Shown piece by piece: positions 10,468 to 60,669 of a stretch of 64,000 nucleotides of DNA. Under the pieces are notes generated by a model. It saw only the letters and a program-made list of their open reading frames with translations, was not told where the DNA came from and made no database searches. Numbering within the stretch: position 1 is the first letter of the stretch; each line of letters begins with the position of its first letter. The stretch spans positions 124,001 through 188,000 of the IMG/VR virus record IMGVR_UViG_3300028364_000014, one strand, 5' to 3'. A program made the position numbers and the translations under genes.

Positions 10468-11859
10468 ATGAGAACATTAGAAGCTTTATGTAAACTTAAT
10501 GATACAAAGGCTGAGGTGTATCTTGTTGGGGGCTTCGTTAGAGATTTCATAAGAAGAAAGAAAAATAAAGACCTAGATATAGTAGTACGCTATATGGCAT
10601 TGTCTCAAATTTCTGACTTTTTAAGTACACACGGTAAAGTAAAAGAATTAATAATACATCGTAATCATGGACCAAAAGCTGACCCAATTAAATTTTTGTC
10701 TTTTTTCGGAAGTGATGGTGTAGAAGCTCAAATTACAACTGTGAAGGGTTCCGGTGAAGATCGAAACCCAAATGCGACGCTAAAACAAGACGGAAAACAT
10801 AGAGATTTTACAATAAATTCAATGTATCTTCCTGTTAATAATATAACATCAAAAGCAGTTATTGATCATTTTGGTGGAAAAAACGATATTGCTGCAAAAC
10901 AAGTCTTAACCGTAGGATCAGCAAAAGCAAAATTTGTAAAATCTCCAATTCGTATATTACGAGCATTTTCCATAGCCGCTCGAACAGGCTACAACATACA
11001 TGATCATGTTAAAGTAGCCATAAGTGCAAATGTACATCTATTAGCCGGAGTGCCTATGGAGGCTATTAGGGCTGAATTTGAGGACATACTTTTAAGTGCT
11101 AAACCATCAAAATATTTTAAAATGATGCAAAAACTTGGGGTATTAAAAATGATACTTCCAGAGCTAGAAGCTACTGTAGACTGCAAACAAGACAAAAGAT
11201 ACCATAAATACAACGTATTTGAACACTTGTTATACTCATGTGATAATATCGAGCCAGATTTAATTTTACGTTTAGCAGCAATTCTACATGATATTGGAAA
11301 GCCTGCTTCACGAAATAAAATTAATAATCACGTTACCTTCTATAAACATGAGGTTTATGGGGCTAGACTAGCTCGCGTTATACTTAAACGATTAAGGTAC
11401 GACAAGGTAACTATCAACAAAGTAACTCATTTAGTAAGAATGCATATGTACCACTATACCAGAGAATTTACTGATGCAGCTGTACGTAGATTCATTGTAA
11501 ATGCAGGTATTACTAAAGATAATATAGAAAATTTGGCGGATCTTCCATTATTTAAAGTAAGAGCAGCAGAACGGCTTGGAAATGGGTTTAAGAAAACCAA
11601 AAAAACCCAAAAGCAGTATGATTATGAGGATAGAATTAAATCAGTGTTTGAATCTAGTGCTGGATTCTCTATAAATGATTTAGCTATTGACGGTAATGAC
11701 CTAATGGACACTTTTAGTATGCCTCCTGGTAGAAATATCGGAGAACTTTTAAAGTATTTACTTAGTCTTGTAATGAGTACACCGGATATTAATAATAAAA
11801 AAGATCTTCTTAGGGCATCACTTGAATTTATTATAAATGAAAAAGAAAAACATGAATAA
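10468..11859 (+). CDS. cca: CCA tRNA nucleotidyltransferase with HD domain
   Basis: YLVGGFVRD, DLDIVV, RDFTINSM and IRILRAF motifs, plus H..HDIGK and HM HD-domain residues. Confidence 0.9.
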   Translation: MRTLEALCKLNDTKAEVYLVGGFVRDFIRRKKNKDLDIVVRYMALSQISDFLSTHGKVKELIIHRNHGPKADPIKFLSFFGSDGVEAQITTVKGSGEDRNPNATLKQDGKHRDFTINSMYLPVNNITSKAVIDHFGGKNDIAAKQVLTVGSAKAKFVKSPIRILRAFSIAARTGYNIHDHVKVAISANVHLLAGVPMEAIRAEFEDILLSAKPSKYFKMMQKLGVLKMILPELEATVDCKQDKRYHKYNVFEHLLYSCDNIEPDLILRLAAILHDIGKPASRNKINNHVTFYKHEVYGARLARVILKRLRYDKVTINKVTHLVRMHMYHYTREFTDAAVRRFIVNAGITKDNIENLADLPLFKVRAAERLGNGFKKTKKTQKQYDYEDRIKSVFESSAGFSINDLAIDGNDLMDTFSMPPGRNIGELLKYLLSLVMSTPDINNKKDLLRASLEFIINEKEKHE

Positions 11860-11960: not shown

Positions 11961-12443
11961 GGGAGGTAGGAGTTTGACGATCATTGTAACGCTTGTTACA
12001 GTGTTTATATAGAGTAAATATGAAAACTCTGTGGTTCCAGGCTATCAACAAGTAGGGTTCCGAAAAGGAATTGCAAACGTGTTCGCCTATAGTAACTAAA
12101 CATTAAAGCATATACCAGGAATTGATGCGGTATCAGCTAATGTAACTGATTAGGGAAATAACTTTTAGGGGTTTTAGTTGACACATCCTCTTGACAGCAA
12201 AAATTCAACTCCGATCTTTTTATTAGAAGCTCATCTGCAATAATAAAATAATACATTAGCACATATACGAAGTAAAGTTCAAATCTTACTAATGTTTGAG
12301 AATTTCATGTTTTCTTGATAAAGATAAACAGAGGTTAAATTAGAAATCTTTATCTAAAAGCACGGAGGGAAGTCCAAAGGGACGTTATTATATAGATGGG
12401 ATACCTCATTGATATAATAAGTGGTTCGAATCCACACCTCCGA
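11961..12443 (+). ncRNA. tmRNA-like RNA (atypical)
   Basis: 5' GGGAGGTAGGAGTTTGAC resembles a tmRNA 5' end. The 3' GTGG-TTCGAAT-CCAC T-arm is followed by ACCTCC, which pairs with GGAGGT. Internal GCA AAC GTG TTC GCC TAT AGT AAC TAA (12073-12099) would encode the tag ANVFAYSN. No G3:U70 pair. Confidence 0.55.
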
Positions 12444-12698
12444 TAAGGTACTTATAAATTATAAAATACGTTATATAAAAACTGAACAATCGCCGTTACA
12501 CTGCACAGACTATTATAGTCAATAAGTCAGTAAAAACCGCTACTTCTGTCACTGTATATAAAATTTTATAACTTGAATCTTAAGTTCGAGTGGGTTAGGG
12601 GTGGGAAATTATAAGTTATCTTAAAAGTGAGTACAATTGGTTTTGTATTTATTTCTCCTTGATTAAAGCAAAGAGTTGTCATGGGCTCTTTGCAAACA

Positions 12699-12766
12699 GT
12701 AAAGACTGACTTGTTTTGGGTTATCATACTGGATTAGTACTCCCTAAAACTATTACTTGTCTTTAC
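12699..12766 (+). ncRNA. Degenerate copy of the recurring CGAA/ACUU stem-loop motif
   Basis: gtaaagac/gtctttac stem with TTATC and ACTT elements; TGAC replaces CGAA. Confidence 0.45.
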
Positions 12767-12874
12767 ATAAGCTAAATACAAGCTTATTTTCTCCTTAAAT
12801 TGTATAGTAAGGTAATTGGGTTGGCTAATTACCTTACATAAGTAACTTAAACCTTTAATAGTTGAGGAATTCGT

Positions 12875-15325: not shown

Positions 15326-15402
15326 GGCTAATTAACTCAATAGGTAGAGTATAAGGTTTAAAAAAAATCTTAATGTTTCTGGTTCAAATCCAGAATTAGC
15401 CA
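15326..15402 (+). tRNA. tRNA-like gene/pseudo-tRNA with an 11-nt A-rich anticodon loop
   Basis: GGCTAAT/ATTAGCC acceptor, D-arm and GGTTCAAATCC T-arm are intact; loop reads TTTAAAAAAAA. Confidence 0.6.
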
Positions 15403-15443
15403 CAATATAATAATAAACTTATCTTTAATTATGGAATTAAATT

Positions 15444-19661: not shown

Positions 19662-19736
19662 GCAGAAGTAATTCAATTGGTAGAAAATTATCCACCAAGA
19701 TAATAAATGCAAGTTCAATCCTTGTCTTCTGCTCCA
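19662..19736 (+). tRNA. tRNA-Gly-like RNA with a 6-nt anticodon loop (CACCAA) and encoded CCA
   Basis: GCAGAAG/CTTCTGC acceptor, U73, CCA; TTATC-CACCAA-GATAA. Confidence 0.7.
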
Positions 19737-21628: not shown

Positions 21629-21762
21629 GAAGATTGTAGCTCAACTGGTTAGAGCGGCTGACCCAAAAATCTTTTTGCATCCACTTGTCACCCATCTATG
21701 ACCGAAGTAAAAAGTTTATCATACTTCAGCGAGTTGAGGGTTCAAATCCCTCCAATCTTCCA
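21629..21762 (+). ncRNA. tRNA scaffold with a 64-nt structured insert in the anticodon loop
   Basis: AAGATTG/CAATCTT acceptor, canonical D and T arms, and a GCTGA/TCAGC stem enclosing 21662-21725; G-1:C73. Confidence 0.75.
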
Positions 21763-27878: not shown

Positions 27879-27968
27879 GTTGGGAGTGGCGAAATTGGCT
27901 AGACGCGCTAGGTTGTGGTCCTAGTATCCGTAAAGGATGTGAGGGTTCGAATCCCTTCTCTCACCCCA
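27879..27968 (+). tRNA. tRNA-His(GTG) with a long variable arm
   Basis: CTAGG-TTGTGGT-CCTAG; G-1:C73 and CCA; ATCC-GTAAA-GGAT variable arm; Leu-type D-arm. Confidence 0.85.
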
Positions 27969-29292: not shown

Positions 29293-30231
29293 ATGACAGT
29301 GCAAAAATTTAATAATAGTGAAGTGGTATTAAACACTGATGTGTATTCATTACATTTTTTTAATCATGGAGAAGGTACTCCCGTATTTATAATCCCACCA
29401 CACGCAGGAAGACATGGAAACATCGCTCAAAAAATGATTGATATGTGTGTTAATCAAGACAAAACTGTCTTTGCTTTTGAACTTAAATCAGCAACTCAGG
29501 CTACAAAAAATACATCAATAAGTAATCTCATTGAAGCACTGACTGAGTGTCAAAACTTTATAGGTAAAAAAGTAGATATAATTGGGCTATGCCAAGGTGG
29601 ATGGGTTTCTGCTATCTATACTGCTTTATATCAGGAGCGAATTGAAAGATTTGCAGCTTTTGCAACCCCAATTAATACTAAGACCGGAAAGAAAAATGCA
29701 ATAGAAGATTATGTATCAAGTAATTCTTTTATTATAGCGTATCATAAAAAAATTGTAGAAATGCACAACGGTATCCAGCCAGGATATATGCAATGGTTGG
29801 CTTTCTCAATGGTTAGACCTGAGTACGTTTATATGGAACGATGGATGCGTTTACAGCAACTAATGTTGTCTTGTGATTATAATGGGCTTAAAAAATGGAA
29901 GAAAAATAATGACTGGTATGATGAACCACAAGACTTAGCAGGGGTTTGGTTTCTACAAGCTTTTAAGAATTTATTTTATAATAATGATCTTTATGAAGGA
30001 AGATGGAAAGTATGTAATAAAATAGTAAATCTTAATAATATAACTTGTCCTTGTTTTTTATATGCAGGAGAAGATGATGATATTACTCACCCACAACAAA
30101 TGTTTGATATGAAAAATAAAATAGGGACAACAAATGTTAAATGTACTTGTTTTCCGGGAGCTGGACATACTAAAGTATTTGTAGGTGCCAGTGAGCTTAA
30201 ACAATTTAAGAAGGATTTCTTTGGTGAGTAA
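29293..30231 (+). CDS. PHA synthase/depolymerase-like alpha/beta hydrolase (Cys nucleophile)
   Basis: PPHAG, GLCQGG nucleophile elbow, EDDDIT acid and GAGH His. Start corrected to the ATG after AGGAG. Confidence 0.75.
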   Translation: MTVQKFNNSEVVLNTDVYSLHFFNHGEGTPVFIIPPHAGRHGNIAQKMIDMCVNQDKTVFAFELKSATQATKNTSISNLIEALTECQNFIGKKVDIIGLCQGGWVSAIYTALYQERIERFAAFATPINTKTGKKNAIEDYVSSNSFIIAYHKKIVEMHNGIQPGYMQWLAFSMVRPEYVYMERWMRLQQLMLSCDYNGLKKWKKNNDWYDEPQDLAGVWFLQAFKNLFYNNDLYEGRWKVCNKIVNLNNITCPCFLYAGEDDDITHPQQMFDMKNKIGTTNVKCTCFPGAGHTKVFVGASELKQFKKDFFGE

Positions 30232-30232
30232 T

Positions 30233-30802
30233 ATGTTTAGTAAAATAGAAAATTGGTTTCTTAATCACTCAGCTGTGGAGAACACGGAACTAGAACATTA
30301 CTATTTTTTTATTTGTAGAACTAAGAATAAACTTGAAGACTTGTATTGGTATGGTCCCAAGAATTTTATTAAAAATGTATGGTTGTATAGAGAATTTCTA
30401 TGGACTAATCATTGGTGGGATTACGTTTATCTATTAGAAATGATAAGGACTAAACTTACTATTGATAGGCAGTATTATGATAAGTATGGTACTTCAGTAA
30501 GTTCAAAAATATATGCACTTGAAATGAAGCTTTGTGCTCTTATACTGGAAAGACTAATTAGAGATGATTATGATTCAGAACTCATTAATAAACATGATAA
30601 AAAATGGCGAATTGATCAATGTAATGGTGATGATTTTATTGATTGTATTAATAATAGAAAAAACCATTTAACGGGGAGTGAAAAAACTCAAGAAAAATTA
30701 GAGTACCTTCAAACCATTAAACAGATTAATGAAAATAAAGATAAAGATTTTGAGAAGGTTTTTACTTATATTTACAAAAATGTACAGAATTGGTGGGATT
30801 AA
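30233..30802 (+). CDS. Hypothetical protein
   Basis: ORF track; ATG directly after the previous stop. Confidence 0.6.
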   Translation: MFSKIENWFLNHSAVENTELEHYYFFICRTKNKLEDLYWYGPKNFIKNVWLYREFLWTNHWWDYVYLLEMIRTKLTIDRQYYDKYGTSVSSKIYALEMKLCALILERLIRDDYDSELINKHDKKWRIDQCNGDDFIDCINNRKNHLTGSEKTQEKLEYLQTIKQINENKDKDFEKVFTYIYKNVQNWWD

Positions 30803-30821
30803 TAGTAAGATCTAGTATAAA

Positions 30822-31037
30822 GAGCGTGTGACGGCAAAAGGAAGCCGGCCTCAAAACGGAGGGGGTAAGGTTAATCACCTAAGAGTTAAATTTATACCCG
30901 TATGGTTGTGAAAGGTCACTGCTCTGTGGGCCTATAAAGGTTTGGTAAACACATCAGGAAGCCCGTTATCCAAGGGAAAAATGCTGGCGGTAATGTTCCA
31001 GTAACTCTAAATGCAGGTTCGAGTCCTGTCACGCTCA
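30822..31037 (+). ncRNA. Giant tRNA-like RNA (216 nt) with an expanded variable region
   Basis: Perfect GAGCGTG/CACGCTC acceptor with A73, CGGC/GCCG D-stem and GCAGG-TTCGAGT-CCTGT T-arm around a multi-hairpin insert of about 145 nt. Confidence 0.7.
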
Positions 31038-31058
31038 CTAATTTTAAATAAGGAATAT

Positions 31059-31148
31059 TCCAGAGTACTCTAATGGAAAGAGGCTTGCCTGTTAAGCAAG
31101 TGTAGTCCTTAATTTGGTATGGTGGTTCGAATCCACCCTCTGGAGCCA
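31059..31148 (+). tRNA. tRNA-Asn(GTT) with a long (20-nt) variable region
   Basis: TCCAGAG/CTCTGGA acceptor, G73 and CCA; CTTGC-CTGTTAA-GCAAG. Confidence 0.85.
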
Positions 31149-31158
31149 AAAAACATAA

Positions 31159-31233
31159 GCGGAAGTAATTCAATTGGTAGAAGCCTATCCTCCAAGATAG
31201 TTAATGCAAGTTCAATCCTTGCCTTCCGCTCCA
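31159..31233 (+). tRNA. tRNA-Gly-like RNA with a 6-nt anticodon loop (CTCCAA) and encoded CCA
   Basis: GCGGAAG/CTTCCGC acceptor, U73, CCA; paralog of 19662-19736. Confidence 0.75.
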
Positions 31234-31244
31234 TTAATTAATAA

Positions 31245-31330
31245 GCGTCGTTAACCCGTACATGGAAGCGGTCCAGTCTGTAAAACTGGTGGCCTAACGG
31301 TCTCGGGATGTTCGAGTCATCCACGGCGCA
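31245..31330 (+). tRNA. tRNA-Tyr(GTA)
   Basis: Type II cloverleaf; CCAGT-CTGTAAA-ACTGG. Confidence 0.9.
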
Positions 31331-31403
31331 CAATTAAGTTTCAAATTATTTTAGATAAAGTTCCACGAGATAGAAGTAAAATAAAACTTTAAAAGGAAAA
31401 ACG

Positions 31404-32624
31404 ATGAAACTATTGAAACTATATAGTCAATTCTATATAAAAAAATTTATTAATCTTTTAAATACTGAAGCCATCCCTCTTGAAATTGTGGATTTATCTG
31501 GTAAGGTATATAAAACCGCGTCAAATAGCATTAGCCATAGGTTAATTATAAAAGATCCTAGATTTTTTAAATCTTTACATTCCCCTAATGCTTTATCTTT
31601 AGGTGAAGCCTACATTAAAGAATACTTTGACATTGAAGGGGATGTTAGAACGCTATATACCATGCTTCATGATAGAATATTGAATACTGAGCAAAAGAAA
31701 AATAAACTAACCTCTTTCATAAAATCTTTTGTGGATGTAAGACAAAAGGAAAAAGAAAATATTGAGTATCACTATGACGCTCCTAGTACTTTTTATAGAA
31801 TTTTTTTAGGGCGAACAATGGGCTATACGTGTGGTTATTATCCTGATCAAACCACCACAATGAGTGAAGCACAAGAAAGAAAAATGGATATCATCTGTAA
31901 AAAATTAAAATTGAAAAAAGGTGAGCATCTTCTAGATGTTGGGTGTGGTTGGGGTAATTTTGCAATTTATGCTGCTGAACACTATGGAGTTACTGTCACA
32001 GGTATTACTTTAAGTGAAGAACAAAAAATATATGCAGACAAATTAGTAGAGGCAAGTCAACTCAGTGTTTCAATTAAAATTATGAACTACCGTGACCTTC
32101 CGTTAAATTATTATGATAAAATATCATGTATTGGGATGTCAGAGCATGTAGGTCAAAAACATATGCAGGAATTTTTTAATACTATATATAAAACACTTAA
32201 ACAAGGCGGATTATTTCTACATCATAGTATCACAACTAATACTAAAAGACAAAAAGGATTAGAAAATTCTTTTTTAAATAAATACATGTACCCTGGAGGG
32301 GAGTTAATGTTTGAGCACGATCTTGTTAAGTGTGCTGAAATAGCTAACTTTGAGTTACTAAATGCTGAGAACTTTAGACCTCATTATGTTACAACGTTGA
32401 ATGATTGGATAGATCGAATAGAGGATAGAAAGTCTGATATATTGAATGTTATTTCCGAACAAGTGTATAGAATATACCATACTTTTTTTATAGGGTCAGC
32501 AGCCTCATTCAAATTAAAAGAAATATCCTTATTTCAAAATCTTTTTTATAAGACTAGTGTATATGACACTGACAATTATTTTAATAGTATCTGTGACTAC
32601 TCCCCCTCTAAGCCGAAGCTATAG
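31404..32624 (+). CDS. cfa: Cyclopropane-fatty-acyl-phospholipid synthase (C-terminus replaced by IS end)
   Basis: IEYHYD, MGYTCGYY, LLDVGCGWG, GITLSEEQ, GMSEHVG, KYMYPGG and HYVTTL..W. Confidence 0.9.
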   Translation: MKLLKLYSQFYIKKFINLLNTEAIPLEIVDLSGKVYKTASNSISHRLIIKDPRFFKSLHSPNALSLGEAYIKEYFDIEGDVRTLYTMLHDRILNTEQKKNKLTSFIKSFVDVRQKEKENIEYHYDAPSTFYRIFLGRTMGYTCGYYPDQTTTMSEAQERKMDIICKKLKLKKGEHLLDVGCGWGNFAIYAAEHYGVTVTGITLSEEQKIYADKLVEASQLSVSIKIMNYRDLPLNYYDKISCIGMSEHVGQKHMQEFFNTIYKTLKQGGLFLHHSITTNTKRQKGLENSFLNKYMYPGGELMFEHDLVKCAEIANFELLNAENFRPHYVTTLNDWIDRIEDRKSDILNVISEQVYRIYHTFFIGSAASFKLKEISLFQNLFYKTSVYDTDNYFNSICDYSPSKPKL

Positions 32625-33874
32625 AGGAGGCTTCTTGGGGGATTAACCCCTGAGACTGTAGCCCCAGTCTCAAAATATTTATGGCAGCATTATGGTCTCT
32701 ATTTAGTACTAAATTGCAGTGAGGACACCTGTGAATTCTGGTTGAAAGGGTCTTTTTTACGACCCGCCCGCAAGCTGGATTTGAGCACATTTGGGATGTA
32801 TATGCTGGATTTACTGGTATTAATTGTTTGCCTAAAATTGATGCTTTATATTGTAGAAAAAGTATGAACTTATTCCAGCTTGCGTCAGCGATAGATTTAT
32901 TTAAACCAGATTTTACCGACGCACCATTAGGTAAATATCCATCAGAATTAGGATCTTTTATTGGAGTAGCTCGCTTAACCATATTCTTTACGTCAAGTTT
33001 TTCATAAACTATAACATTGGAGATAGACAAGAGCTTGTTGGCTGTTTTATGGAGAAAATCATTACGTTGGCACTTTATTCTGTAATGACATTTCCTAATT
33101 GCTTTTAACAGCCTGTAGTATTTCTTTGTTCTTTTAGTAGTTTTTGATAACTTTCTTTGTAGATTAGCGAGACTTTTTTCATTAGCTCTAAAACTTTTTG
33201 GTGATTTTACAGAATTTCCATCTGAATCATAATAGAAATCATTTAAACCTAAATCTATTCCTAAAAAGGTAGTTGGATTCTGCTTAATCTCTACTTTAAG
33301 ATGATTCTCAAAGGAGAAGCAGACAAACCATTTACCAGCTTCTTTGGATATAGTTAAGGTTTTAATTGTTCCATTTTCTGGAATTTCTCTGTGGTATTTA
33401 ATCTTAATATTACCTATTTTGGAGATTTTTAGTATACCATCGACAGGACGTTCTTTAAACTGTGGGTAAGTAATGCTGCTCCAGTCTTTAAACTTTTTAA
33501 ACTTTGGAAAACCCGCCTTAGCTTCCCCAGATTTAATTCTTCTGAAGAAAGATTTATAGGCTGTGTCTAAACGTTTTAGTGTATTTTGAAGCACCTGTGA
33601 ATGTACTGAACCAAACCACGGACGTTCTTTCTTTAGAAAAGTAAGTTCATTGCTTTGTTCAAAAAGACTGATTGAAATACTGTGGTTTTCATAAAGCCAG
33701 ATTCTGTCCTCAAGAGCCCAGTTATACAAATACCTACACATGGAGAACTGATTCTCCAGGCGTGTGGTTTGAGCTTTAGTAGGATAAATTCTGTATTTAT
33801 GTGTAAGTAGCATTTCTCTCCATAAGTAAAATAATTAGTTTCTAATACATAATATATCACAGCATGTGATGTAT
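32593..33874 (-). mobile_element. IS200/IS605-family tnpB-only element (IS1341-like)
   Basis: The - strand right end has a subterminal hairpin ending in TCAC at 32593; left end adjoins TTGAC; rejoining the flanks restores an in-frame cfa C-terminus. No tnpA is present in the window. Confidence 0.8.
32608..33813 (-). CDS. tnpB: RNA-guided endonuclease TnpB
   Basis: HKYRIYPT HTH, GIDLG (RuvC-I), VYEKL (RuvC-II), TSQMCS..C zinc finger and RDHNAAINI (RuvC-III). Confidence 0.95.
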   Translation of the reverse strand: MLLTHKYRIYPTKAQTTRLENQFSMCRYLYNWALEDRIWLYENHSISISLFEQSNELTFLKKERPWFGSVHSQVLQNTLKRLDTAYKSFFRRIKSGEAKAGFPKFKKFKDWSSITYPQFKERPVDGILKISKIGNIKIKYHREIPENGTIKTLTISKEAGKWFVCFSFENHLKVEIKQNPTTFLGIDLGLNDFYYDSDGNSVKSPKSFRANEKSLANLQRKLSKTTKRTKKYYRLLKAIRKCHYRIKCQRNDFLHKTANKLLSISNVIVYEKLDVKNMVKRATPIKDPNSDGYLPNGASVKSGLNKSIADASWNKFILFLQYKASILGKQLIPVNPAYTSQMCSNPACGRVVKKTLSTRIHRCPHCNLVLNRDHNAAINILRLGLQSQGLIPQEASSIASA

Positions 33875-39910: not shown

Positions 39911-41803
39911 TTATACATTACTAGTTTCTTCAAAGTCTGCATCAACTACGTCATCTTCCTGAGTTGTGTCCTCTTGGTCTGGCGTTGATCCTTCCTGCGA
40001 GGCTTGTTGATACATAGCTTCGGCAAGTTTGTGGGATGCTTGGGACAAAGCTTCACTCTTCTCCTTAATTGCAGCCACATCTGTACCGTCCTTGACCTTT
40101 TTCAAGTCTTCACAAGCTTCTTCAATTAAAATCTTAGTAGCATCTTCAAGTTTATCAGTATTTTCTTTCATATTCTTTTCTGTTTGATGAATAAGAGACT
40201 CCGCAGAATTCTTTGCTTCTACAAGTTCACATTTCTTTTTATCTTCGTCCGCGTGGAGTTCAGCGTCATTAATCATATTTTTAATTTCTTCGTCAGTAAG
40301 TCCGCTTGCAGCGGTGATACTAATAGATTGCTCTTTATCAGTAGCAATATCTTTAGCCGCAACATTTACTATTCCATTTACATCTATATTAAAAGTTACT
40401 TCTATTTGGGGAACCCCTCTTGGTGCCGCAGGGATATCAGATAGTTCAAATTGGCCAAGGGTTTTATTACCTGACGCCACATCACGCTCTCCTTGGAGTA
40501 CATGTATTGTTACTGCAGGTTGATCATCCGCCGCTGTAGAAAATACTTGGCTTTTCTTAATAGGGATAGTGGAGTTTTTTTCAATAAGTTTAGTCATAAT
40601 CCCGCCAAGAGTCTCAATCCCAAGACTTAAAGGTGTAACATCCAAAAGAAGCACATCATTTACATCTCCTTGAAGAACCCCTGCTTGAATTGCTGCCCCC
40701 ATAGCCACCACTTCATCGGGGTTAACACCCTTATGAGGTTTTTTTCCAAATATTTTTTCTACTCGTGCTTGAACTGCGGGCATACGAGTCATCCCACCCA
40801 CAAGTACCACCTCATTGATATTACCTATAGGAATTTTTGCATCTTTAAGTGCAGTATTACATGGTCCTTCTAAATTATCAAGAAGATCCGCCACAAGGGA
40901 TTCTAGTTTTGCTCTAGTAAGTTTTACATCAAGGTGCTTAGGTCCATTTGCATCGGCAGTGATGAATGGTAGATTGATATCTGTCTCAACAACTGAAGAT
41001 AGTTCCATTTTAGCCTTTTCTGCGGCTTCTTTTAGGCGCTGAAGAGCCATCTTATCAGTTCTGATATCTATGCCCTGACTTTTTTTAAACTCATCAGCAA
41101 CGTAGTCTATAATTCTGAGGTCAAAATCCTCACCACCGAGATGCGTATCACCATTAGTAGATTTTACTTCAAACACCCCGTCTCCAATTTCCAGTATGGA
41201 CACATCAAACGTGCCTCCACCAAGATCGAACACAGCAATCTTCTCTTCCCCTTTTTTGTCAAGACCATAGGCTAAAGAAGCGGCAGTGGGTTCATTAATA
41301 ATACGTTTTACATCCAGCCCTGCAATCCTTCCTGCATCTTTTGTAGCTTGTCGTTGGCTATCATTAAAATAAGCTGGTACAGTAATAACAGCTTCTTTAA
41401 CTTCTTCACCGAGATAATCTTCCGCCATTTTTTTAATATCCGCTAATATAAATGACGAGATTTCAGCTGGACTGTGTTGTTTTCCTCTGAGATTGATCCT
41501 AGTATCGCCGTTAGATGCCTCTTCAATTAAAAATGGGAGCACTTTTTTATCTTTTTGAATCTGAGGAGAGTTAAACTTCCTACCAACTAAACGTTTTACA
41601 CCGAATACAGTATTTTCAGGATTTGTAATGGCTTGACGCCTTGCTGTTTGTCCTACTAATCTATCACCACTCTCAGTTAGAGCTACTACGGATGAAGTTG
41701 TTCTATTCCCCTCTGAATTTGTAATTACTTTAGGTTCTCCTGCTTCCATAACAGCTACACACGAGTTCGTTGTTCCAAGATCAATTCCAATTATTTTAGT
41801 CAT
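39911..41803 (-). CDS. dnaK: Chaperone DnaK (Hsp70)
   Basis: [42 protein letters not shown] and QGER..; full length. Confidence 0.98.
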
Positions 41804-43338: not shown

Positions 43339-46300
43339 TTATTTACCTTCATGTAATAATAAGCATTTTTCTTTATGTGTTTTAGGTTCTACAACAGTAA
43401 GTTTTATTTTACCTTTCACCGCACTCACATTAACAGTAGATTCAGGAGAATAGTCATTACTTAACAACTCAGTGGCTATATCAGTTGAAATGAATTTTTC
43501 AATAGCCCTTGTAATAGGTCTAGCTCCAAATTTCTCATCCACTCCTTCTTTGTAAATAAAATTACGTACTTTATTATCAAAAATTAATTCTATGTCTTTA
43601 TAGTCAGTAGCACTAGTGTGAAGATTGTCAGATAGTTTAGTTAATTCTAAATCTATGATTTGCATATAGTCTTTCTTATTTAAATCTTTAAAGTGGACTA
43701 TTGAATCAATTCTGTTTAGAAATTCTGGTTTAAATTTACCCTTTAAAGCTGTGTCTAATGCAGAGTTCTTCTTAACCTCAGTAAGTAATGCTACATCACC
43801 AAACCCGATAGTTTTAGTAACTTCTTCTACTTCTTTTACGCCAATATTAGAAGTCATCAAAATAATAGTATCTTTAAATGATACAGAAACTCCTTTACCA
43901 TCAGTTAATCTACCCTCATCTAGGACTTGTAACAATAGGTCGTATACTTTAGTGCTTGCCTTTTCAATTTCATCAAACACTACTACAGAGAAAGGATTTT
44001 CAGCTATGGCATTAGTAAGAACACCTCCACTATCATGCCCTATGTATCCTGCCGGAGAGTTATGTACTGAGAACTCAATTACATATGAAGTGTCTTTTTC
44101 TACCGCAAGGTCGTAAACTTTTCCTGTATATTTTATTTTTTTTATGTCTTTAAGTTGAAAATATACATAATTATCATCTATCCAAGTCTTTCTTTGTATA
44201 TTAGTATTTTTAGTATCTTCAAAGTCTATATTAAAATTAAACTCACTATTAAGTTTTTCTACTTGATTACCACTAATATATAATCTATATCTTTTTCTGT
44301 GCTTAGGATTTTTAGGAGTTTCAACATTTTTATATGTTATATATCCAAGTCTTCTAAATAGAAGTTCCATTTGAGAAAATAAAGTCGAAGAAACTGTACT
44401 ATAATCCATTCTTCTTTTTATAACTGTACACCCATCACCAAATACTGCAGTCTCAAGAAATCCTTTTACTAAATTATCAGGTAAATCCTTAAACCAACTT
44501 GGAACTTTTTTTAAATAGGTATTACGCCCAAATAAATCACTCATCATTTTACATACTATTTTAGATGACATCCAAACTCTATGAGAATTATTATTAGATC
44601 TATCTTCGAGGCTAACTTTAACATCGTTACCAAAAACACATCGTATAAGTTTGACCACTTCTGTTATATAAGAGTGTTCTTTACTATTAAAAGTAAAGTT
44701 AATAGTTTTACTAGGTCCTGAACTTCCTCCTTCGCTTACATAGTATCCAGCTAATCTAGTAAAATTCTCATTCACTTCAATATATCTTGGTACTTTGACT
44801 TGCTTCTGGGCCCAAATATACTCATCGTCGTATTTATAGTAACTATCACTTTCAATATAATTAACAAGGTCTATTCTATTAGGGTATATCCCAGTAGATT
44901 TATATCTAGGGTATGCCACAATATCATTTTTTTCTAAGCTTGAAGCCGCTACCCAGTTTAATTTATAACCAGCATAAGGAGGATTAACACAGTATTCCTG
45001 TTTACAAGTAGGTTTACATACTCTATAAGAACGTTTTTCTCCTTTATCGCAATTATCGTGTTTGATTGCTAAAACCTCGTGGGTCTTAGTGGTTACTACA
45101 GGTACATTAGTATTGCTCATCACGAGCTCTACCATTTCACCGTCTTGGTCATATTCGTGTACAAATTCAACAGCCCGTTCGTTACCTGTATGTGAAATTA
45201 CTTTTTCCCCTATCTTAATAGCTTCTATGTTTTTTAAGCTACCATCTCCCATAAGAACCTTACTACCTGGCACAAAACAACCAATTAATTTTGCATATTC
45301 ATGATCCGAAGAGTACTCTGAGCAATCAATAATGATTCTATTTTTTTTAGACTTAATCAAAGAATCAGCCAGTACTTTACTAGCTAGTGTTTTACCAATA
45401 CCTGTTCTACCCGCAAATAAGAATGAACCAATAGGCTTCTTAGGGTCTTTGAGCCCTACACTTGCTCTTTTCACTGATTCAGATATCTTGTCAACAGCTG
45501 TGTCTTGTCCAATTAAAGACATTTTCATTTCAGAATTTAATTTAAGAAGCTCTGCTTTTTTAACTGCTTTAAAACTTAGTCCTTGCTTCTTCTTTTTACT
45601 ACTGTCATGTCCTTTAGTGTATGATTTTAATCCATTTTTTCTAGCAGGCTTCTCGTCTTGCTCATCAATTTCTTCATCTTTTTGATAAGAAAGTACTACA
45701 TCAAAATCAATGCCCTCATTAACTCCCTTACAAAGACTAAATAACTCTTTAATTATAGGAGCAGGACTTAATTTAACTCCCATACCATCAATAAGCTCAT
45801 AAAGTTCTTCCACATCTATAACACATTCTTGGACAATGAAAGTTTTAAAACTCATATTATTGTGAAAATATCTTTGTCTAATTAAATGCTCTACATCGTC
45901 AATCTCAAAATCTTTAACAAAAATGTACTCACCTATCCTATCCCACCAAACCTTGGTTTTGGTCCATTTTAATTCAGATAGTGATTTCACATCCTCTGAA
46001 GACGCTTCTTTCTTTTTTGGGTTTTCCATATAATTCTTAGTGGCTTCTTTGTCTGAACCATCAATAGGGGAATAGTTTCCCTCTGAATCATAGTAAGTTT
46101 TACTCCAGTGGGAGTTCTCATTTAATAAAGTACCTTCATCATTATCACTTATTTTAATTTTTAATACATTATTTTTATTAATGATAATATTACTAGCATC
46201 TAAACTAGGGTTATGATTTATAATAGCCTTAGTTAATTCTTCTCTTACTTTTAATAAATTAACTTCTTTTACTACAGCAGGAGAATTAAGATAAGCCATA

Positions 46301-46491
46301 AATTGGTTAAGATTAGCCACAAAATGGGCAATTAATACATCTTCATAATAACTTCTTGATATTTTACCCTTCTCACTAACAAACTGTGTAAGAAAGTCTT
46401 CTAAATCACTTTCAGGAAACCCTATAAGTAACAACTCATAGTCAATAGAGTCTATCATCTGGGGGTGTATTTTATAATCGGTATTAGACAT
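43339..46491 (-). CDS. ClpA/ClpB D2-like AAA+ ATPase with novel N-terminus and an intein
   Basis: LIGQD.AV, FLFAGRTGIGKT, IDCSEY, [intein] SPAGYIG, VVFDEIEKA, LQVLDEGRLTD, FKPEFLNRID and GARP. Confidence 0.9.
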   Translation of the reverse strand: MSNTDYKIHPQMIDSIDYELLLIGFPESDLEDFLTQFVSEKGKISRSYYEDVLIAHFVANLNQFMAYLNSPAVVKEVNLLKVREELTKAIINHNPSLDASNIIINKNNVLKIKISDNDEGTLLNENSHWSKTYYDSEGNYSPIDGSDKEATKNYMENPKKKEASSEDVKSLSELKWTKTKVWWDRIGEYIFVKDFEIDDVEHLIRQRYFHNNMSFKTFIVQECVIDVEELYELIDGMGVKLSPAPIIKELFSLCKGVNEGIDFDVVLSYQKDEEIDEQDEKPARKNGLKSYTKGHDSSKKKKQGLSFKAVKKAELLKLNSEMKMSLIGQDTAVDKISESVKRASVGLKDPKKPIGSFLFAGRTGIGKTLASKVLADSLIKSKKNRIIIDCSEYSSDHEYAKLIGCFVPGSKVLMGDGSLKNIEAIKIGEKVISHTGNERAVEFVHEYDQDGEMVELVMSNTNVPVVTTKTHEVLAIKHDNCDKGEKRSYRVCKPTCKQEYCVNPPYAGYKLNWVAASSLEKNDIVAYPRYKSTGIYPNRIDLVNYIESDSYYKYDDEYIWAQKQVKVPRYIEVNENFTRLAGYYVSEGGSSGPSKTINFTFNSKEHSYITEVVKLIRCVFGNDVKVSLEDRSNNNSHRVWMSSKIVCKMMSDLFGRNTYLKKVPSWFKDLPDNLVKGFLETAVFGDGCTVIKRRMDYSTVSSTLFSQMELLFRRLGYITYKNVETPKNPKHRKRYRLYISGNQVEKLNSEFNFNIDFEDTKNTNIQRKTWIDDNYVYFQLKDIKKIKYTGKVYDLAVEKDTSYVIEFSVHNSPAGYIGHDSGGVLTNAIAENPFSVVVFDEIEKASTKVYDLLLQVLDEGRLTDGKGVSVSFKDTIILMTSNIGVKEVEEVTKTIGFGDVALLTEVKKNSALDTALKGKFKPEFLNRIDSIVHFKDLNKKDYMQIIDLELTKLSDNLHTSATDYKDIELIFDNKVRNFIYKEGVDEKFGARPITRAIEKFISTDIATELLSNDYSPESTVNVSAVKGKIKLTVVEPKTHKEKCLLLHEGK
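44059..45279 (-). mobile_element. Intein (407 aa) with LAGLIDADG homing endonuclease
   Basis: Begins CFVPGSKV, ends SVHN before a +1 Ser; T.THEV block B; LAGYYVSEG and FLETAVFGDG motifs. Confidence 0.92.
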
Positions 46492-58256: not shown

Positions 58257-59528
58257 TTAAAATCCTTTTTCATCTATTACAATATCTTTAGGTAACTTAT
58301 CTTCATGTTTTTTACTATAAGATGGAAACTGGTAAGCCCCTGTAGGAAATCTTTGTGAATAGGAAATCTCTATAACACACGGTAGTTCCCAATAATCTAT
58401 TTCGCATTCACCTTGTTTAATTTTTAGCCCTGAACCTACTCTACCTAGAGGAATTATCTTACCTACCTGATTATATTTACCTATTAAAAGACTACCGACT
58501 TTACCTTGTTTAGCACCAGTACCTTCCTTCCAATCATAAGCTACAACATCATCTTCTTTAACAGCTTTTACCTTCCAACATGCCCTTCTTGTGGGTTTTC
58601 CTGTGTAGGTAATTTCTGCATTCTCATGAGCGTGCCAAAGAACTAATCCTTCATATTGCATTTTATTTTTATCTACCCACCCATATGCCTCATTATACGA
58701 ATCAAATAGTTTCTCTTTGGGTAGTATTACAGAACTATTAGCTATTAAACTTTTTGTAAGAAATCCTAACGAATCCTCATAATTTTCTTCTGTAAAGTCC
58801 TCTCTATCTGAAAACAACACATTAAAAACTACAGCTATAACTTTATGTTTTTCCTGCAAAGCTAGTGATGTTTTAATATCTTCCTTCAATTCACCATTTA
58901 AAGTGTCAGATTTAGAGATACTTTGCATCAACTTAAACCCTTCCATATGGGATATTTTTAACTCAGGATCGATTACAAATTCAGCAATCAATAAGGTATT
59001 ATACGGCAATTTCATATCTTCTATGGTTTTTACAATGTTTAAGTACTTTTTAGTATGGTCATTAATACGTCTAGTATATATTTTAACTTCTCCTATAGAA
59101 GTTACTAAAATATAATGACACAAACCATTATATTTTAAAAAAAACCTTGCTAACTTATCCTTAATCAATTTATTACATTTTGTTTTAGAAATACTTGTAT
59201 TAGGTTTAGAACAACAAAACTGGACAGGTAAATTATTAAAATCCATTTGATTATTATTTAAGTCTGGTAAATCATCTAAAGATTTAGCTATTTGTAACCC
59301 TTCCTTTAATCTAGTTTCAATTAATCTAGTATAGTCAGCTTTAGCAGCCTCATCTGGGTTAAGTTCATTAGCTTTACCTCTATTAATGTAGCCATAGGTA
59401 TGAAAGGTGGTTTGAATTTTTCCACCAACTAGTCCCCACTTACGGGTAATTGTATCACCAACCAATGTTAAAATGACAAATTTTACTCTCCCAGTAGAGT
59501 GATTTTGTACTAAAATTATTTCTTCCAT
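58257..59528 (-). CDS. ATP-dependent DNA ligase with WGR-like N-terminus
   Basis: RKWG..GG, motif I KYNG, AEF, EGLVL, WKVK and an OB-fold with VGSG ... RFP. Confidence 0.8.
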   Translation of the reverse strand: MEEIILVQNHSTGRVKFVILTLVGDTITRKWGLVGGKIQTTFHTYGYINRGKANELNPDEAAKADYTRLIETRLKEGLQIAKSLDDLPDLNNNQMDFNNLPVQFCCSKPNTSISKTKCNKLIKDKLARFFLKYNGLCHYILVTSIGEVKIYTRRINDHTKKYLNIVKTIEDMKLPYNTLLIAEFVIDPELKISHMEGFKLMQSISKSDTLNGELKEDIKTSLALQEKHKVIAVVFNVLFSDREDFTEENYEDSLGFLTKSLIANSSVILPKEKLFDSYNEAYGWVDKNKMQYEGLVLWHAHENAEITYTGKPTRRACWKVKAVKEDDVVAYDWKEGTGAKQGKVGSLLIGKYNQVGKIIPLGRVGSGLKIKQGECEIDYWELPCVIEISYSQRFPTGAYQFPSYSKKHEDKLPKDIVIDEKGF

Positions 59529-59588
59529 TTTATAGCTCCTTTAATTTTCCTCAATCTTACACATAATATAGTACATTTTATGGATTTG

Positions 59589-60452
59589 TCAAGTAAATAT
59601 TTGATCCTTAACACATCTAAGTTCATAATACCCACAACCAGGGAGCTTGTGTACGTCCTTATGACATGTTTTGCATAAAGTAATGGTGTTAGCCACATCA
59701 TTTCCTAAACGTGGATTCTGGGTGTATCCTTCGATGTGATGGCAATGAAGCGGAGCTTCCTTTTGGATGGCTCCGCAAATTTGGCACTTCCAGTTGTCAC
59801 GCTCAAAACACATTTGTCTAACTAGAGGATTAACTTCGCGGGATGATGCAGGTTTGAATTCTTTAGGCCATAATTTTTGATTATACACAGGACAAGCTTC
59901 TTTACAATTATCTGAACAGTATAATGAACATTCACCTTCCATCTGTCCTTTAATTGTTTTAATTCTTGAACTTACTTCTATATTTGTAGGTATAAAGTAT
60001 TTACCACAGTACCTACATTTAACTTCTAAAGAGATACCATCTTTAGAAAGTCTGGGTGACTCATCAACAGTGAGTTTATCTTTATAAGTTTTATAAATAG
60101 CAAAATTATTATTGTATTCAATACTTCGTGCTTTTATTACTTCTTTATTCATTTCTTTATATATTTTATTTTGTTTGTTTATTTTTATTTTATTATGTGT
60201 TCTATATTTATATTTTCTACTGCTTATTTCTTTTTTATTGTTATTATAATATTCTTTGTGTTGTTTATTTATTTTTTCTTTGTTATTTTGATAATATAAT
60301 TTCATAAATAAAGAGTGTTCTTTTTTATTATTATAATAATAACCTTTCTTACAGTCTTTACATATTGTATAAATACCATCTTTGGAATTCTTATCCTTAC
60401 TGAACTCACTAGAATCTTTAACTTCTTTACATTTTGTACACATTTTTTCCAT
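59589..60452 (-). CDS. HNH endonuclease
   Basis: N-terminal CxxC zinc finger, YYxNNK repeats and CQICG..HCHHI..TLCKTCH. Confidence 0.85.
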   Translation of the reverse strand: MEKMCTKCKEVKDSSEFSKDKNSKDGIYTICKDCKKGYYYNNKKEHSLFMKLYYQNNKEKINKQHKEYYNNNKKEISSRKYKYRTHNKIKINKQNKIYKEMNKEVIKARSIEYNNNFAIYKTYKDKLTVDESPRLSKDGISLEVKCRYCGKYFIPTNIEVSSRIKTIKGQMEGECSLYCSDNCKEACPVYNQKLWPKEFKPASSREVNPLVRQMCFERDNWKCQICGAIQKEAPLHCHHIEGYTQNPRLGNDVANTITLCKTCHKDVHKLPGCGYYELRCVKDQIFT

Positions 60453-60669
60453 GTAATTTCTCCTTATAAGATATCTAGTTACTCCACTATCTATAAGAAA
60501 GTTAGTTAACTATCACTAAAAATAGGGTAAAGTTCTTGCATAATAACTATTAAATCATCTTGCATTTTTAGTTCCTCTATATTAGACCAACCCATACCAT
60601 CACTTATAATTACCACAGTGTAATCGTCGTAAGGTTCAAGACTTTTTATTAATTCTTTTTTTGTCATAC

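What the first reader, a model, noticed from the sequence alone, without database searches (positions are those of the whole stretch)
30822..31037. Giant 216-nt tRNA-framed RNA with multi-hairpin cargo
Seen: a perfect 7-bp acceptor with A73, a 4-bp D-stem and a canonical T-arm, a stunted anticodon arm (CCUC-AAAACG-GAGG) and ~145 nt of branched structure in the variable position. It is too short for a typical group I intron and shows no tag ORF. Together with 11961 and 21629 it suggests the phage repeatedly uses the tRNA frame, which RNase P and its own CCA enzyme could mature, as a chassis for functional RNAs.
Basis: partly seen in the sequence, partly recalled or inferred. Interest (0 to 1): 0.8.

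Follow-up and report, generated by a model that had tools for sequence, protein, structure and literature searches.

The report
Giant tRNA-shaped RNA gene in phage
A jumbo lake phage carries, at the head of a small tRNA cluster, a 216-base gene with the ends and core of a long-variable-arm tRNA, no usable anticodon loop and about 127 extra bases, so it is probably a stable tRNA look-alike of unknown role rather than a decoding tRNA.

Summary
Window 30822-31037 (+) has a perfect 7-bp acceptor stem, A73, a 4-bp D-arm with G18G19 and a canonical T-arm. It also has a 4-bp/6-nt stub where the anticodon arm should be, a second small hairpin, and a 7-bp long-range stem enclosing 113 nt. The frame and these sub-helices exceed chance. 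The fold inside the 113 nt does not.

It is not a decoding tRNA, a tmRNA, a group I intron host or any Rfam family. It has no homologue in the three sequence collections scanned or in GenBank phages. Pairing conservation and transcript ends could therefore not be tested for this RNA.

An RNA of the same layout turned up in two related phages (L116/L123). It sits in a tRNA array, encodes CCA, and shows 8 compensatory pairs with none broken. Such RNAs therefore exist as a selected class. Its cargo is not detectably homologous to this one.

The frame is class II (Leu/Tyr-like). It keeps A73, A15-U48 and G18G19, the set that E. coli LeuRS needs.

Best reading: an RNA matured by the tRNA pathway that mimics a tRNA, comparable to T4 RNAC. 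Its function is inferred, not shown. I rate it a new variant of a known kind, interest about 0.6.

The parts
30822..30828 (+). acceptor stem, 5' strand (GAGCGUG)
   Evidence: 7 Watson-Crick pairs with 31030-31036; pair probability at least 0.98; found by the frame script
30829..30831 (+). linker U8-G9-A (one nt longer than canonical)
   Evidence: sequence
30832..30847 (+). D-arm CGGC-AAAAGGAA-GCCG with A14, A15, G18G19
   Evidence: pair probability at least 0.98
30849..30862 (+). anticodon-position hairpin CCUC-AAAACG-GAGG: 4 bp, 6-nt A-rich loop, no U33
   Evidence: probability 0.69; p = 0.02 against shuffles
30868..30880 (+). second hairpin AGGU-UAAUC-ACCU, read as the ordinary class II variable arm
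   Evidence: probability about 0.6; ARAGORN draws it as the variable arm once 60-186 of the RNA is deleted in silico
30882..30888 (+). long-range stem, 5' strand (AGAGUUA)
   Evidence: 7 Watson-Crick pairs with 31002-31008; probability about 0.9; p = 0.02
30889..31001 (+). 113-nt cargo interior; 45% G+C; internal fold uncertain
   Evidence: no Rfam match; no repeat in the window
31002..31008 (+). long-range stem, 3' strand (UAACUCU)
31009..31012 (+). 4-nt connector AAAU; its last U sits at position 48 (A15-U48)
   Evidence: sequence
31013..31029 (+). T-arm GCAGG-UUCGAGU-CCUGU (G53-C61, U54, U55, C56, A58)
31030..31037 (+). acceptor stem 3' strand (CACGCUC) and discriminator A73; no CCA encoded
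31059..31331 (+). three tRNA genes immediately downstream (spacers 21, 10 and 11 nt); probably one transcript with the giant RNA
   Evidence: no terminator-like site predicted in 30000-32000
10468..11859 (+). phage CCA-adding enzyme gene, the candidate 3'-end maturase
   Evidence: Pfam PolyA_pol head, PolyA_pol_RNAbd, tRNA_NucTran2_2 and HD

Best explanation
This is a real RNA gene derived from a class II (long-variable-arm, Leu/Tyr-like) tRNA. It has lost decoding ability and carries an extra domain of about 127 nt, closed by a 7-bp stem, inserted after the variable arm.

Inferred steps, none shown here:
1. It is transcribed with the three tRNAs that follow it.
2. RNase P cuts at G1.
3. The 3' end is trimmed at A73, and the phage or host nucleotidyltransferase adds CCA.
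4. It accumulates as a stable L-shaped tRNA mimic of about 219 nt whose elbow and acceptor end are intact.

It has no 7-nt anticodon loop and no U33, so it cannot read codons.

The most likely role is a tRNA look-alike acting in trans. It would occupy or divert a protein that recognises the tRNA body: a host tRNA-cleaving defence nuclease, LeuRS, or another tRNA-handling enzyme. The extra domain would supply the specificity or a second binding surface.
For: - Frame and sub-helices exceed chance. Tertiary-interaction nucleotides are all present: U8, A14, A15-U48, G18G19, G53-C61, U54-A58.
- The interior is G+C-rich for this genome. The element lies 20 nt after a stop codon and 21 nt before the next tRNA, on the same strand.
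- After in-silico removal of the cargo, ARAGORN draws a class II cloverleaf.
- No decoding loop: ARAGORN, with or without introns allowed, and the Rfam tRNA model do not call it.
- An RNA of the same layout in L116/L123 has 8 compensatory pairs and none broken out of 73. These fall in the acceptor stem, the long-range stem and both cargo domains. CCA is encoded and it sits in a tRNA array.
- The phage invests in tRNA maintenance: CCA enzyme, RlaP-type nucleotidyltransferase, ATP-dependent ligase, and 19 tRNA-model matches including several aberrant ones.
- Host nucleases that cut tRNA-Tyr, and phage tRNAs that counter them, are documented (PMC13096335, PMC11555353).
- E. coli LeuRS needs A73, A15-U48, G18G19 and the elbow, but neither the anticodon nor the variable arm (PMC9976931).
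- Phage T4 has small stable RNAs of unknown role in its tRNA cluster (PMC3014915). T4 rnaC carries a canonical T-arm.
Against: - No expression data: no RNA run was listed.
- No homologue, so no covariation for this RNA itself. DNA runs show a clonal population with no variants in it.
- Folding energy of the cargo is no better than shuffles.
- Homology to the L116 type is not demonstrated. The whole-RNA model scores it 17.5 bits, while ordinary tRNAs score 11-32 bits. The cargo-only model does not find it.
- The target of the proposed mimicry is pure inference.
Confidence: 0.55

Rival explanations
1. It is a decaying tRNA pseudogene: a class II tRNA gene hit by an insertion and no longer under selection.
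For: The anticodon arm is defective. The cargo fold is not better than shuffles. No relatives are available to show constraint. This phage carries many aberrant tRNA genes.
Against: All 7 acceptor pairs, the D-arm, the T-arm and every tertiary-contact nucleotide are intact. The insert is closed by a perfect 7-bp stem (p = 0.02). It is G+C-rich like structured RNA, not like the 32% G+C background. It is not a repeat or mobile-element copy in the window. The same layout is under clear structural selection in L116/L123.
Confidence: 0.15
2. It is a cis-acting processing signal. The tRNA-shaped fold only recruits RNase P and 3' nucleases to separate the upstream mRNA from the tRNA cluster, and the released RNA has no role of its own.
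For: It sits 20 nt after the stop codon of ORF 30185-30802 and heads a four-gene RNA cluster. tRNA-like punctuation elements are known in organelles (established knowledge; PMC1920247 listed).
Against: An ordinary tRNA would do the same job. Nothing explains a 127-nt G+C-rich domain closed by a perfect stem, or the covariation throughout the cargo of the L116 type.
Confidence: 0.1
3. It is a chargeable giant tRNA. LeuRS aminoacylates it, and it then acts as an amino-acid donor outside normal decoding, as a LeuRS or EF-Tu sink, or on the ribosome.
For: A73, A14, A15-U48, G18G19 and an intact elbow are present. This is the set required by E. coli LeuRS, for which the anticodon and variable arm are dispensable (PMC9976931). 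The L116 type has the same set and encodes CCA.
Against: No charging data. Identity rules are taken from E. coli, while the host is probably a Desulfobacterota member. The extra nucleotide in the 8-9 linker and the bulky domain next to the core may prevent LeuRS binding. The D-arm and T-loop resemble the phage's own tRNA-Tyr at least as much as its tRNA-Leu.
Confidence: 0.1
4. It is the precursor of a normal tRNA, and the extra sequence is removed by a new kind of intron splicing.
For: L116 encodes RtcB inside its tRNA array. The window has an RlaP-type nucleotidyltransferase and a ligase. Another tRNA in the window has a 57-nt insert in its anticodon loop.
Against: 1932 single contiguous deletions around the cargo were tested. 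ARAGORN called 59 of them, and those shown have defective anticodon arms or A-rich, non-standard anticodons. The one drawn has a mismatched anticodon stem and no U33. The best L116 product is 'Phe(AAA)' with A33. There is no Rfam group I match here, whereas a group I intron in another phage tRNA was detected by the same tool. L123 has lost most of RtcB yet keeps the RNA.
Confidence: 0.05
5. It is a divergent tmRNA or tmRNA-like rescue RNA.
For: tRNA-like ends surround a large body. A short ORF (AUG plus 10 codons, then UAA) lies in the cargo.
Against: Position 3:70 is G-C, not G.U. It has a true D-stem and is only 216 nt. There is no ARAGORN tmRNA call. No Rfam tmRNA family matches at E up to 10, whereas a phage tmRNA in L047 was detected by the same tool.
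Confidence: 0.02

Closest known systems
Phage T4 RNAC (species 1) and RNAD (species 2): small stable RNAs of the T4 tRNA cluster
   Same: Encoded inside a phage tRNA gene cluster and longer than a tRNA (139 and 119 nt). rnaC has a canonical T-arm (CCGGG-UUCGAAU-CCCGG) followed by a 3' strand that pairs imperfectly with its 5' end. Their biological role is unknown (PMC3014915; PMC9697503).
   Different: There is no sequence similarity. T4 rnaC lacks a perfect 7-bp acceptor and a recognisable D-arm in my fold. The window RNA keeps the complete class II core and places its extra domain in the variable region.
Class II tRNAs (bacterial tRNA-Leu, tRNA-Tyr, tRNA-Ser)
   Same: 7-bp acceptor, D-arm with G18G19, A15-U48, A73, T-arm, and a hairpin in the variable position. 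ARAGORN draws a class II cloverleaf once the cargo is removed.
   Different: It has a 4-bp stem with a 6-nt loop lacking U33 instead of an anticodon arm. The variable region is 150 nt. The known long variable arms I am aware of reach only about 20-25 nt (own knowledge).
The L116/L123 RNA found here (IMGVR_UViG_3300005002_000005 and 3300044961_000333)
   Same: The order of parts is the same: acceptor, class II-type D-arm with an AAAGGAAG loop, anticodon-position hairpin with an A-rich loop, small hairpin, long-range stem enclosing two domains, 4-nt connector ending in U, T-arm, A73. It also lies in a phage tRNA array.
   Different: 244 nt, with CCA encoded, and a canonical 5-bp/7-nt anticodon arm. 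The cargo is not detectably homologous, and the whole-RNA model does not separate the window RNA from ordinary tRNAs.
tmRNA
   Same: tRNA-like acceptor and T-arm ends with a large body in between; phages do encode it (L047).
   Different: The window RNA has no G3.U70, no tag reading frame with a conventional ending, a real D-stem, and no match to tmRNA models.
Engineered 'tRNA scaffold' RNAs (own knowledge: Ponchon and Dardel, 2007)
   Same: A foreign RNA is embedded in a tRNA body so that the cell's tRNA maturation gives defined ends and stability.
   Different: The engineered version replaces the anticodon arm. Here the cargo follows the variable arm, and the origin is natural.

Membership tests
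canonical decoding tRNA | cloverleaf with 7-bp acceptor, D-arm, T-arm and conserved tertiary nucleotides | tested here: met
   Sequence and fold; frame script.
canonical decoding tRNA | 5-bp anticodon stem with a 7-nt loop, U33 and a readable anticodon | tested here: not met
   CCUC-AAAACG-GAGG: 4 bp, 6-nt loop, no U33. Not called by ARAGORN with or without introns, nor by the Rfam tRNA model.
class II tRNA-derived frame | variable-position hairpin, A15-U48-type core and long D-loop; recognised as class II when the insert is removed | tested here: met
   ARAGORN on the in-silico deletion of RNA positions 60-186; D-arm and T-loop closest to the phage's tRNA-Tyr.
tmRNA | G3.U70 alanine identity pair | tested here: not met
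   G3-C70.
tmRNA | match to tmRNA models, with a tag ORF and pseudoknots | tested here: not met
   No ARAGORN tmRNA call. No Rfam tmRNA hit at E up to 10. Positive control found in L047.
tRNA interrupted by a group I intron | group I catalytic core inserted in the anticodon loop | tested here: not met
   No Intron_gpI match at E up to 10. Positive control found in L016. The insert is not in an anticodon loop.
phage tRNA-cluster stable RNAs (T4 RNAC/RNAD type) | non-tRNA RNA gene embedded in a phage tRNA cluster with tRNA-like 3' features | tested here: met
   Position in the cluster; T4 rnaC T-arm seen. This is a descriptive class, not a homology family.
phage tRNA-cluster stable RNAs (T4 RNAC/RNAD type) | accumulates as a discrete stable RNA during infection | not testable with these tools
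   No RNA run was listed.
L116/L123-type giant tRNA-like RNA | same order of helices (frame, two small hairpins, long-range stem 4 nt before the T-stem) | tested here: met
   Layout script: in about 1.1 Mb of phage tRNA-rich loci plus the window, only the window RNA and L116 passed as single RNAs; the four other passes (L010, L066 twice, L112) I judged to span adjacent tRNA genes. L123 was fetched later.
L116/L123-type giant tRNA-like RNA | sequence and structure homology detectable by covariance model | tested here: inconclusive
   Whole-RNA model: best hit in the window (17.5 bits), but tRNAs score 11-32 bits. Cargo-only model: no hit on the window cargo.
Rfam large phage-associated RNAs (GOLLD, ROOL, Y RNA-like and others) | match to the family model | tested here: not met
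   No match at E up to 10 in 30700-31150. GOLLD was detected as a positive control in L034.

The most novel reading that the evidence does not exclude
Phages have a so far undescribed class of giant class II tRNA derivatives. They keep exactly the LeuRS-type identity set (A73, A15-U48, G18G19, intact elbow) while replacing the decoding loop and adding a 130-170-nt domain. They are CCA-tailed and leucylated, and they use the charged end or the synthetase interaction for something other than decoding. Candidate roles are a LeuRS or EF-Tu sink, an aminoacyl donor, or a ribosome-binding regulator. Different lineages would carry different cargo domains.
Probability: 0.12. Interest if true: 0.9.

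Novelty: new variant of a known kind. Interest (0 to 1): 0.6.

Why it matters
Phage tRNA clusters are now known to be weapons in conflicts with host tRNA-cleaving defences. Non-tRNA RNAs in such clusters (T4 RNAC and RNAD) have nevertheless stayed unexplained for decades.

The window RNA has a complete tRNA core, a disabled decoding loop and a large extra domain. The second lineage shows the same layout with clear covariation. Together they give a concrete class to test.

If such RNAs are matured and act as tRNA mimics, they would be a new kind of phage counter-defence or translation-control RNA. They would also be a natural precedent for the tRNA-scaffold trick used in RNA engineering. If they are aminoacylated, the known size range of synthetase substrates would grow well beyond today's long-variable-arm tRNAs.

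Tried and rejected
- Rfam at gathering and at E up to 10, and ARAGORN with and without introns and with tmRNA search: nothing at 30822-31037.
- Repeat or mobile-element origin: no second copy of any part in the window. The 7-bp inverted ends have no target-site duplication (sequence).
- Close relatives through neighbouring proteins: ORF 30185-30802 and the CMAS gene retrieve only the same contig. CMAS homologues are bacterial (Desulfobacterales, about 63% identity), not phage.
- Exact and loop-anchored degenerate DNA patterns in viral, metagenome and genome collections: only self and chance hits.
- GenBank phages, blastn: only T-arm matches.
- Population variants from four DNA runs: none in the RNA. 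RNA runs: none listed.
- Covariance models of the L116 type. The whole model is not discriminating against tRNAs. The cargo model gives no hit.
- More L116-type members: only L123.
- A recurrent 228-nt 'frame' in L053/L093/L094/L104 proved to be an ordinary tRNA plus a chance upstream match.
- Shared upstream protein between the two RNA types: none.
- Stop-codon recoding, which would invite a suppressor reading: no sign. Stop-free stretches fit the standard code, and TAA is the main stop.
- A 4-5-nt complementarity between the A-rich loop and a 'GGAAGC..CGUU / GCUU' cargo segment appears in both RNA types, with CG in one and GC in the other. I estimate it at chance level for such short matches and do not rely on it.

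Full report
WHAT IS THERE. The window is part of a 237,910-bp viral contig (IMGVR_UViG_3300028364_000014 = Ga0306898_1000003) from lake and salt-lake metagenomes, with about 32% G+C.

At 30822-31037 (+) the sequence reads as follows, by RNA position:
- 1-7: GAGCGUG, acceptor 5' strand.
- 8-10: UGA linker.
- 11-26: CGGC-AAAAGGAA-GCCG, the D-arm.
- 27: G.
- 28-41: CCUC-AAAACG-GAGG, hairpin 1.
- 42-46: GGGUA.
- 47-59: AGGU-UAAUC-ACCU, hairpin 2.
- 60: A.
- 61-67: AGAGUUA, long-range stem 5' strand.
- 68-180: 113-nt interior.
- 181-187: UAACUCU, long-range stem 3' strand.
- 188-191: AAAU.
- 192-208: GCAGG-UUCGAGU-CCUGU, the T-arm.
- 209-215: CACGCUC, acceptor 3' strand.
- 216: A73.

The nucleotides that hold a tRNA in its L shape are all present: U8, A14, A15 with U48, G18G19, G53-C61, U54/A58 and C56. 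No CCA is encoded.

IS IT MORE THAN CHANCE? Twenty shuffles of the whole window gave one hit in total. With the frame fixed and everything between D-arm and T-arm shuffled, two features remain unusual:
- A 7-bp Watson-Crick stem ending 3-6 nt before the T-stem appears in 2% of shuffles.
- A 4-bp hairpin directly after the D-arm appears in 2% of shuffles.

The interior is 45% G+C in a window that averages 32.6% (top 3% of 113-nt windows). Folding energy does not help. The z-score is -1.0 to -1.4 for the whole RNA and about 0 for the cargo. The frame, the two small hairpins and the closing stem are therefore credible. The 'branched' interior is only a prediction.

WHAT IT IS NOT.
- ARAGORN finds no tRNA or tmRNA here, even with introns up to 400 nt allowed.
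- Rfam 15 gives no match at gathering scores, and none at E up to 10 in a 451-nt search.
- The same tools detected a group I intron in a phage tRNA (L016), a phage tmRNA (L047) and GOLLD (L034) in other loci, so they do find such elements in phage tRNA arrays.
- Position 3:70 is G-C, which excludes alanine identity.
- No part of the element is repeated in the window.
- The genome uses the standard code, so a suppressor reading is not called for.
- 1932 single contiguous deletions around the cargo were tested. ARAGORN called 59 of them, and those shown have defective anticodon arms or A-rich, non-standard anticodons. The one drawn has a mismatched anticodon stem and no U33.

HOMOLOGUES. None was found.
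- The flanking ORFs are orphans or retrieve only the same contig.
- The CMAS-type methyltransferase gene downstream is about 63% identical to Desulfobacula/Desulfobacterales proteins. This hints at the host but gives no related phage.
- An exact 25-mer, and a pattern fixing the loops while leaving the stems free, found only the source contig and chance hits in viral, metagenome and genome collections.
- GenBank phages match only the T-arm.
- Four DNA runs holding the phage show no variant in the RNA. No RNA run was listed.

AN RNA OF THE SAME LAYOUT ELSEWHERE. A scan for the T-arm sequence brought in about 1.1 Mb of phage tRNA-rich loci. I screened them for a frame plus U8 plus a D-arm with GG plus a long-range stem just before the T-stem. 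Only the window RNA and L116:14733-14976 passed as single RNAs. The other passes I judged to span adjacent tRNA genes.

The L116 RNA is 244 nt. It ends a 13-tRNA array, has A73, and encodes CCA. A related phage (L123, 80-92% identical) has it too. The two copies differ at 25 aligned columns. RNAalifold places 73 pairs, of which 8 changed on both sides and stayed paired, 3 changed on one side and stayed paired, and none is broken. The compensatory pairs lie in the acceptor stem, the long-range stem and both cargo domains. That RNA is therefore under selection for this fold.

Removing positions 44-216 from it leaves a perfect 74-nt cloverleaf with an AAAAAGC loop, which ARAGORN calls 'Phe(AAA)' with A33. 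Removing 60-186 from the window RNA leaves a class II cloverleaf with hairpin 2 as the variable arm.

The two RNAs share the order of parts, an AAAGGAAG-type D-loop, an A-rich loop at the anticodon position and a 4-nt connector ending in U. Homology is not shown. A model of the whole L116 type gives the window RNA the best score in the window (17.5 bits, E = 2e-4), but ordinary tRNAs score 11-32 bits. A model of the cargo alone does not find the window cargo. I therefore treat L116/L123 as evidence that this kind of RNA exists and is functional, not as homologues.

FRAME ORIGIN AND IDENTITY. The D-arm and the UUCGAGU T-loop resemble the phage's own tRNA-Tyr (31245-31331) more than any other tRNA in the window. 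The L116 D-arm looks like that of tRNA-Leu (own reading). Both parents are class II.

According to the identity review PMC9976931, E. coli LeuRS requires A73, the A15-U48 pair, G18G19 and A20a in the D-loop, and the D/T-loop contacts. The anticodon and the long variable arm are dispensable, and minimal RNAs lacking both arms are still charged. The window RNA has A73, A15-U48, G18G19 and the elbow contacts. I could not place an A20a. The extra linker nucleotide and the bulky domain could interfere.

CONTEXT. The RNA lies 20 nt after the stop of ORF 30185-30802. Spacers of 21, 10 and 11 nt separate it and the next three tRNA genes:
- A class II tRNA with a GUU anticodon and G73.
- A tRNA with a 6-nt anticodon loop.
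- tRNA-Tyr.

No terminator-like site is predicted in 30000-32000.

The window also encodes a CCA-adding enzyme, an RNase T-like exonuclease, an RlaP-type nucleotidyltransferase, an ATP-dependent ligase, DnaK and ClpB. It holds 19 matches to tRNA models.

- 21630-21761 scores 50.7 bits on the tRNA model and has a 57-nt insert in the anticodon loop.
- About 11961-12446 has a tmRNA-like 5' end, a T-arm and six closing pairs, with no model match.

MECHANISM. Shown:
- The sequence can form a complete tRNA core with an extra closed domain.
- It lies in a tRNA cluster.
- It cannot decode.
- It matches no Rfam family and is not a tRNA or tmRNA by ARAGORN.
- An RNA of the same layout is under structural selection in another phage lineage.

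Inferred:
- Co-transcription with the tRNAs.
- RNase P cleavage at G1.
- 3' trimming and CCA addition.
- Accumulation as a stable mimic.

I favour a trans-acting tRNA look-alike that engages a protein recognising the tRNA body. Host nucleases that cut tRNA-Tyr, one of them in the variable loop, and phage tRNAs that counter them are documented (PMC13096335, PMC11555353). This phage carries repair and maturation enzymes. The link to those systems is still a hypothesis.

Rivals are a pseudogene (0.15), a mere processing signal (0.10), a charged giant tRNA (0.10), a novel intron (0.05) and a tmRNA-like RNA (0.02).

COMPARISON WITH KNOWN RNAs. The nearest precedent is T4 RNAC/RNAD. They are small stable RNAs in the T4 tRNA cluster whose roles are unknown (PMC3014915; confirmed as late RNAs in PMC9697503). 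T4 rnaC has a canonical T-arm and imperfect end pairing. The window RNA differs in three ways: it keeps the whole class II core, it places its cargo after the variable arm, and it shows no sequence relation.

I rate it a new variant of a known kind, with moderate to high interest. The interest comes mainly from the existence of the L116/L123 counterpart and from the retained synthetase-type identity set.

Noticed in passing
L116:14733-14979 and L123:13335-13581: A 244-nt tRNA-framed RNA with encoded CCA at the end of a phage tRNA array. It shows 8 compensatory and no broken pairs between two phages about 92% identical over the RNA. It has no Rfam match. Removing positions 44-216 leaves a perfect cloverleaf with an AAAAAGC loop.
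   Followed up: yes
window 11961-12446 (+): An RNA candidate of about 485 nt directly after the CCA-enzyme gene. Its 5' end (GGGAGGUAGGAGUUUGACGA) resembles a tmRNA start, and its 3' end has GUGG-UUCGAAU-CCAC followed by ACCUCC, which pairs with the 5' GGAGGU. Position 3:70 is G-C. Neither ARAGORN nor Rfam calls it.
   Followed up: partly
window 21630-21761 (+): A tRNA (Rfam 50.7 bits; ARAGORN calls Leu-CAA) with a 57-nt insert in the anticodon loop. That is far too short for a group I intron, in a phage with bacterial-type tRNAs.
   Followed up: partly
window 27880-27968 and 31059-31148 (+): Two tRNAs with long variable arms (class II bodies) carry GUG (His) and GUU (Asn) anticodons. The second has G73, like tRNA-Ser. 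Together with tRNA-Tyr (GUA) at 31245, all three have GUN anticodons.
   Followed up: no
window 31159-31233 and 19662-19736 (+): Paralogous Gly-like tRNAs (U73, CCA encoded) have 6-nt anticodon loops (CUCCAA and CACCAA). DNA runs also hold a relative of the first, with 9 differences, in a different flank.
   Followed up: no
window 15326-15403 (+); L123:12197-12274 and 12754-12830: tRNAs with A-rich or odd-length anticodon loops: an A8 run in the window tRNA, and ARAGORN 'aaag' and 'tt' anticodons in L123. These echo the A-rich loops of the two giant RNAs.
   Followed up: no
window 32608-33813 (-): An IS605-type TnpB gene (OrfB_IS605, Cas12f1-like TNB) overlaps the 3' end of the CMAS gene. The stretch at its 3' end (32566-32655, minus strand) may be its guide RNA; the only sign of structure there is a chance-level covariance-model hit (E = 1.1).
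   Followed up: no
window 31404-32624 (+): A cyclopropane-fatty-acyl-phospholipid-synthase-like gene is about 63% identical to Desulfobacula/Desulfobacterales proteins. This suggests a Desulfobacterota host and a host-derived gene.
   Followed up: partly
window 43339-46491 (-): A ClpB-like AAA+ gene is interrupted by an intein (Hint plus LAGLIDADG domains). A full-length DnaK gene lies next to it (39911-41803).
   Followed up: no
window 58257-61446 (-); L116:9927-11435: RNA-repair-type genes: an ATP-dependent ligase and an RlaP-family nucleotidyltransferase in the window, and RtcB inside the L116 tRNA array. RtcB is largely deleted in L123.
   Followed up: no
L123:13590-13790: Two further tRNA-like sequences follow the giant RNA and are not called by ARAGORN. 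One ends in UCGGG-UGCAAAU-CCCGA-GCGCC-A. The other has a class II Leu-like body ending in ACCA.
   Followed up: no
L133:264-345 (Escherichia phage 121Q 'tRNA-Leu(taa)'): This annotated tRNA appears to lack a D-arm and has a 23-nt variable region. Its last 36 nt are 86% identical to RNA positions 176-211 of the window RNA, at a chance-level E-value.
   Followed up: no
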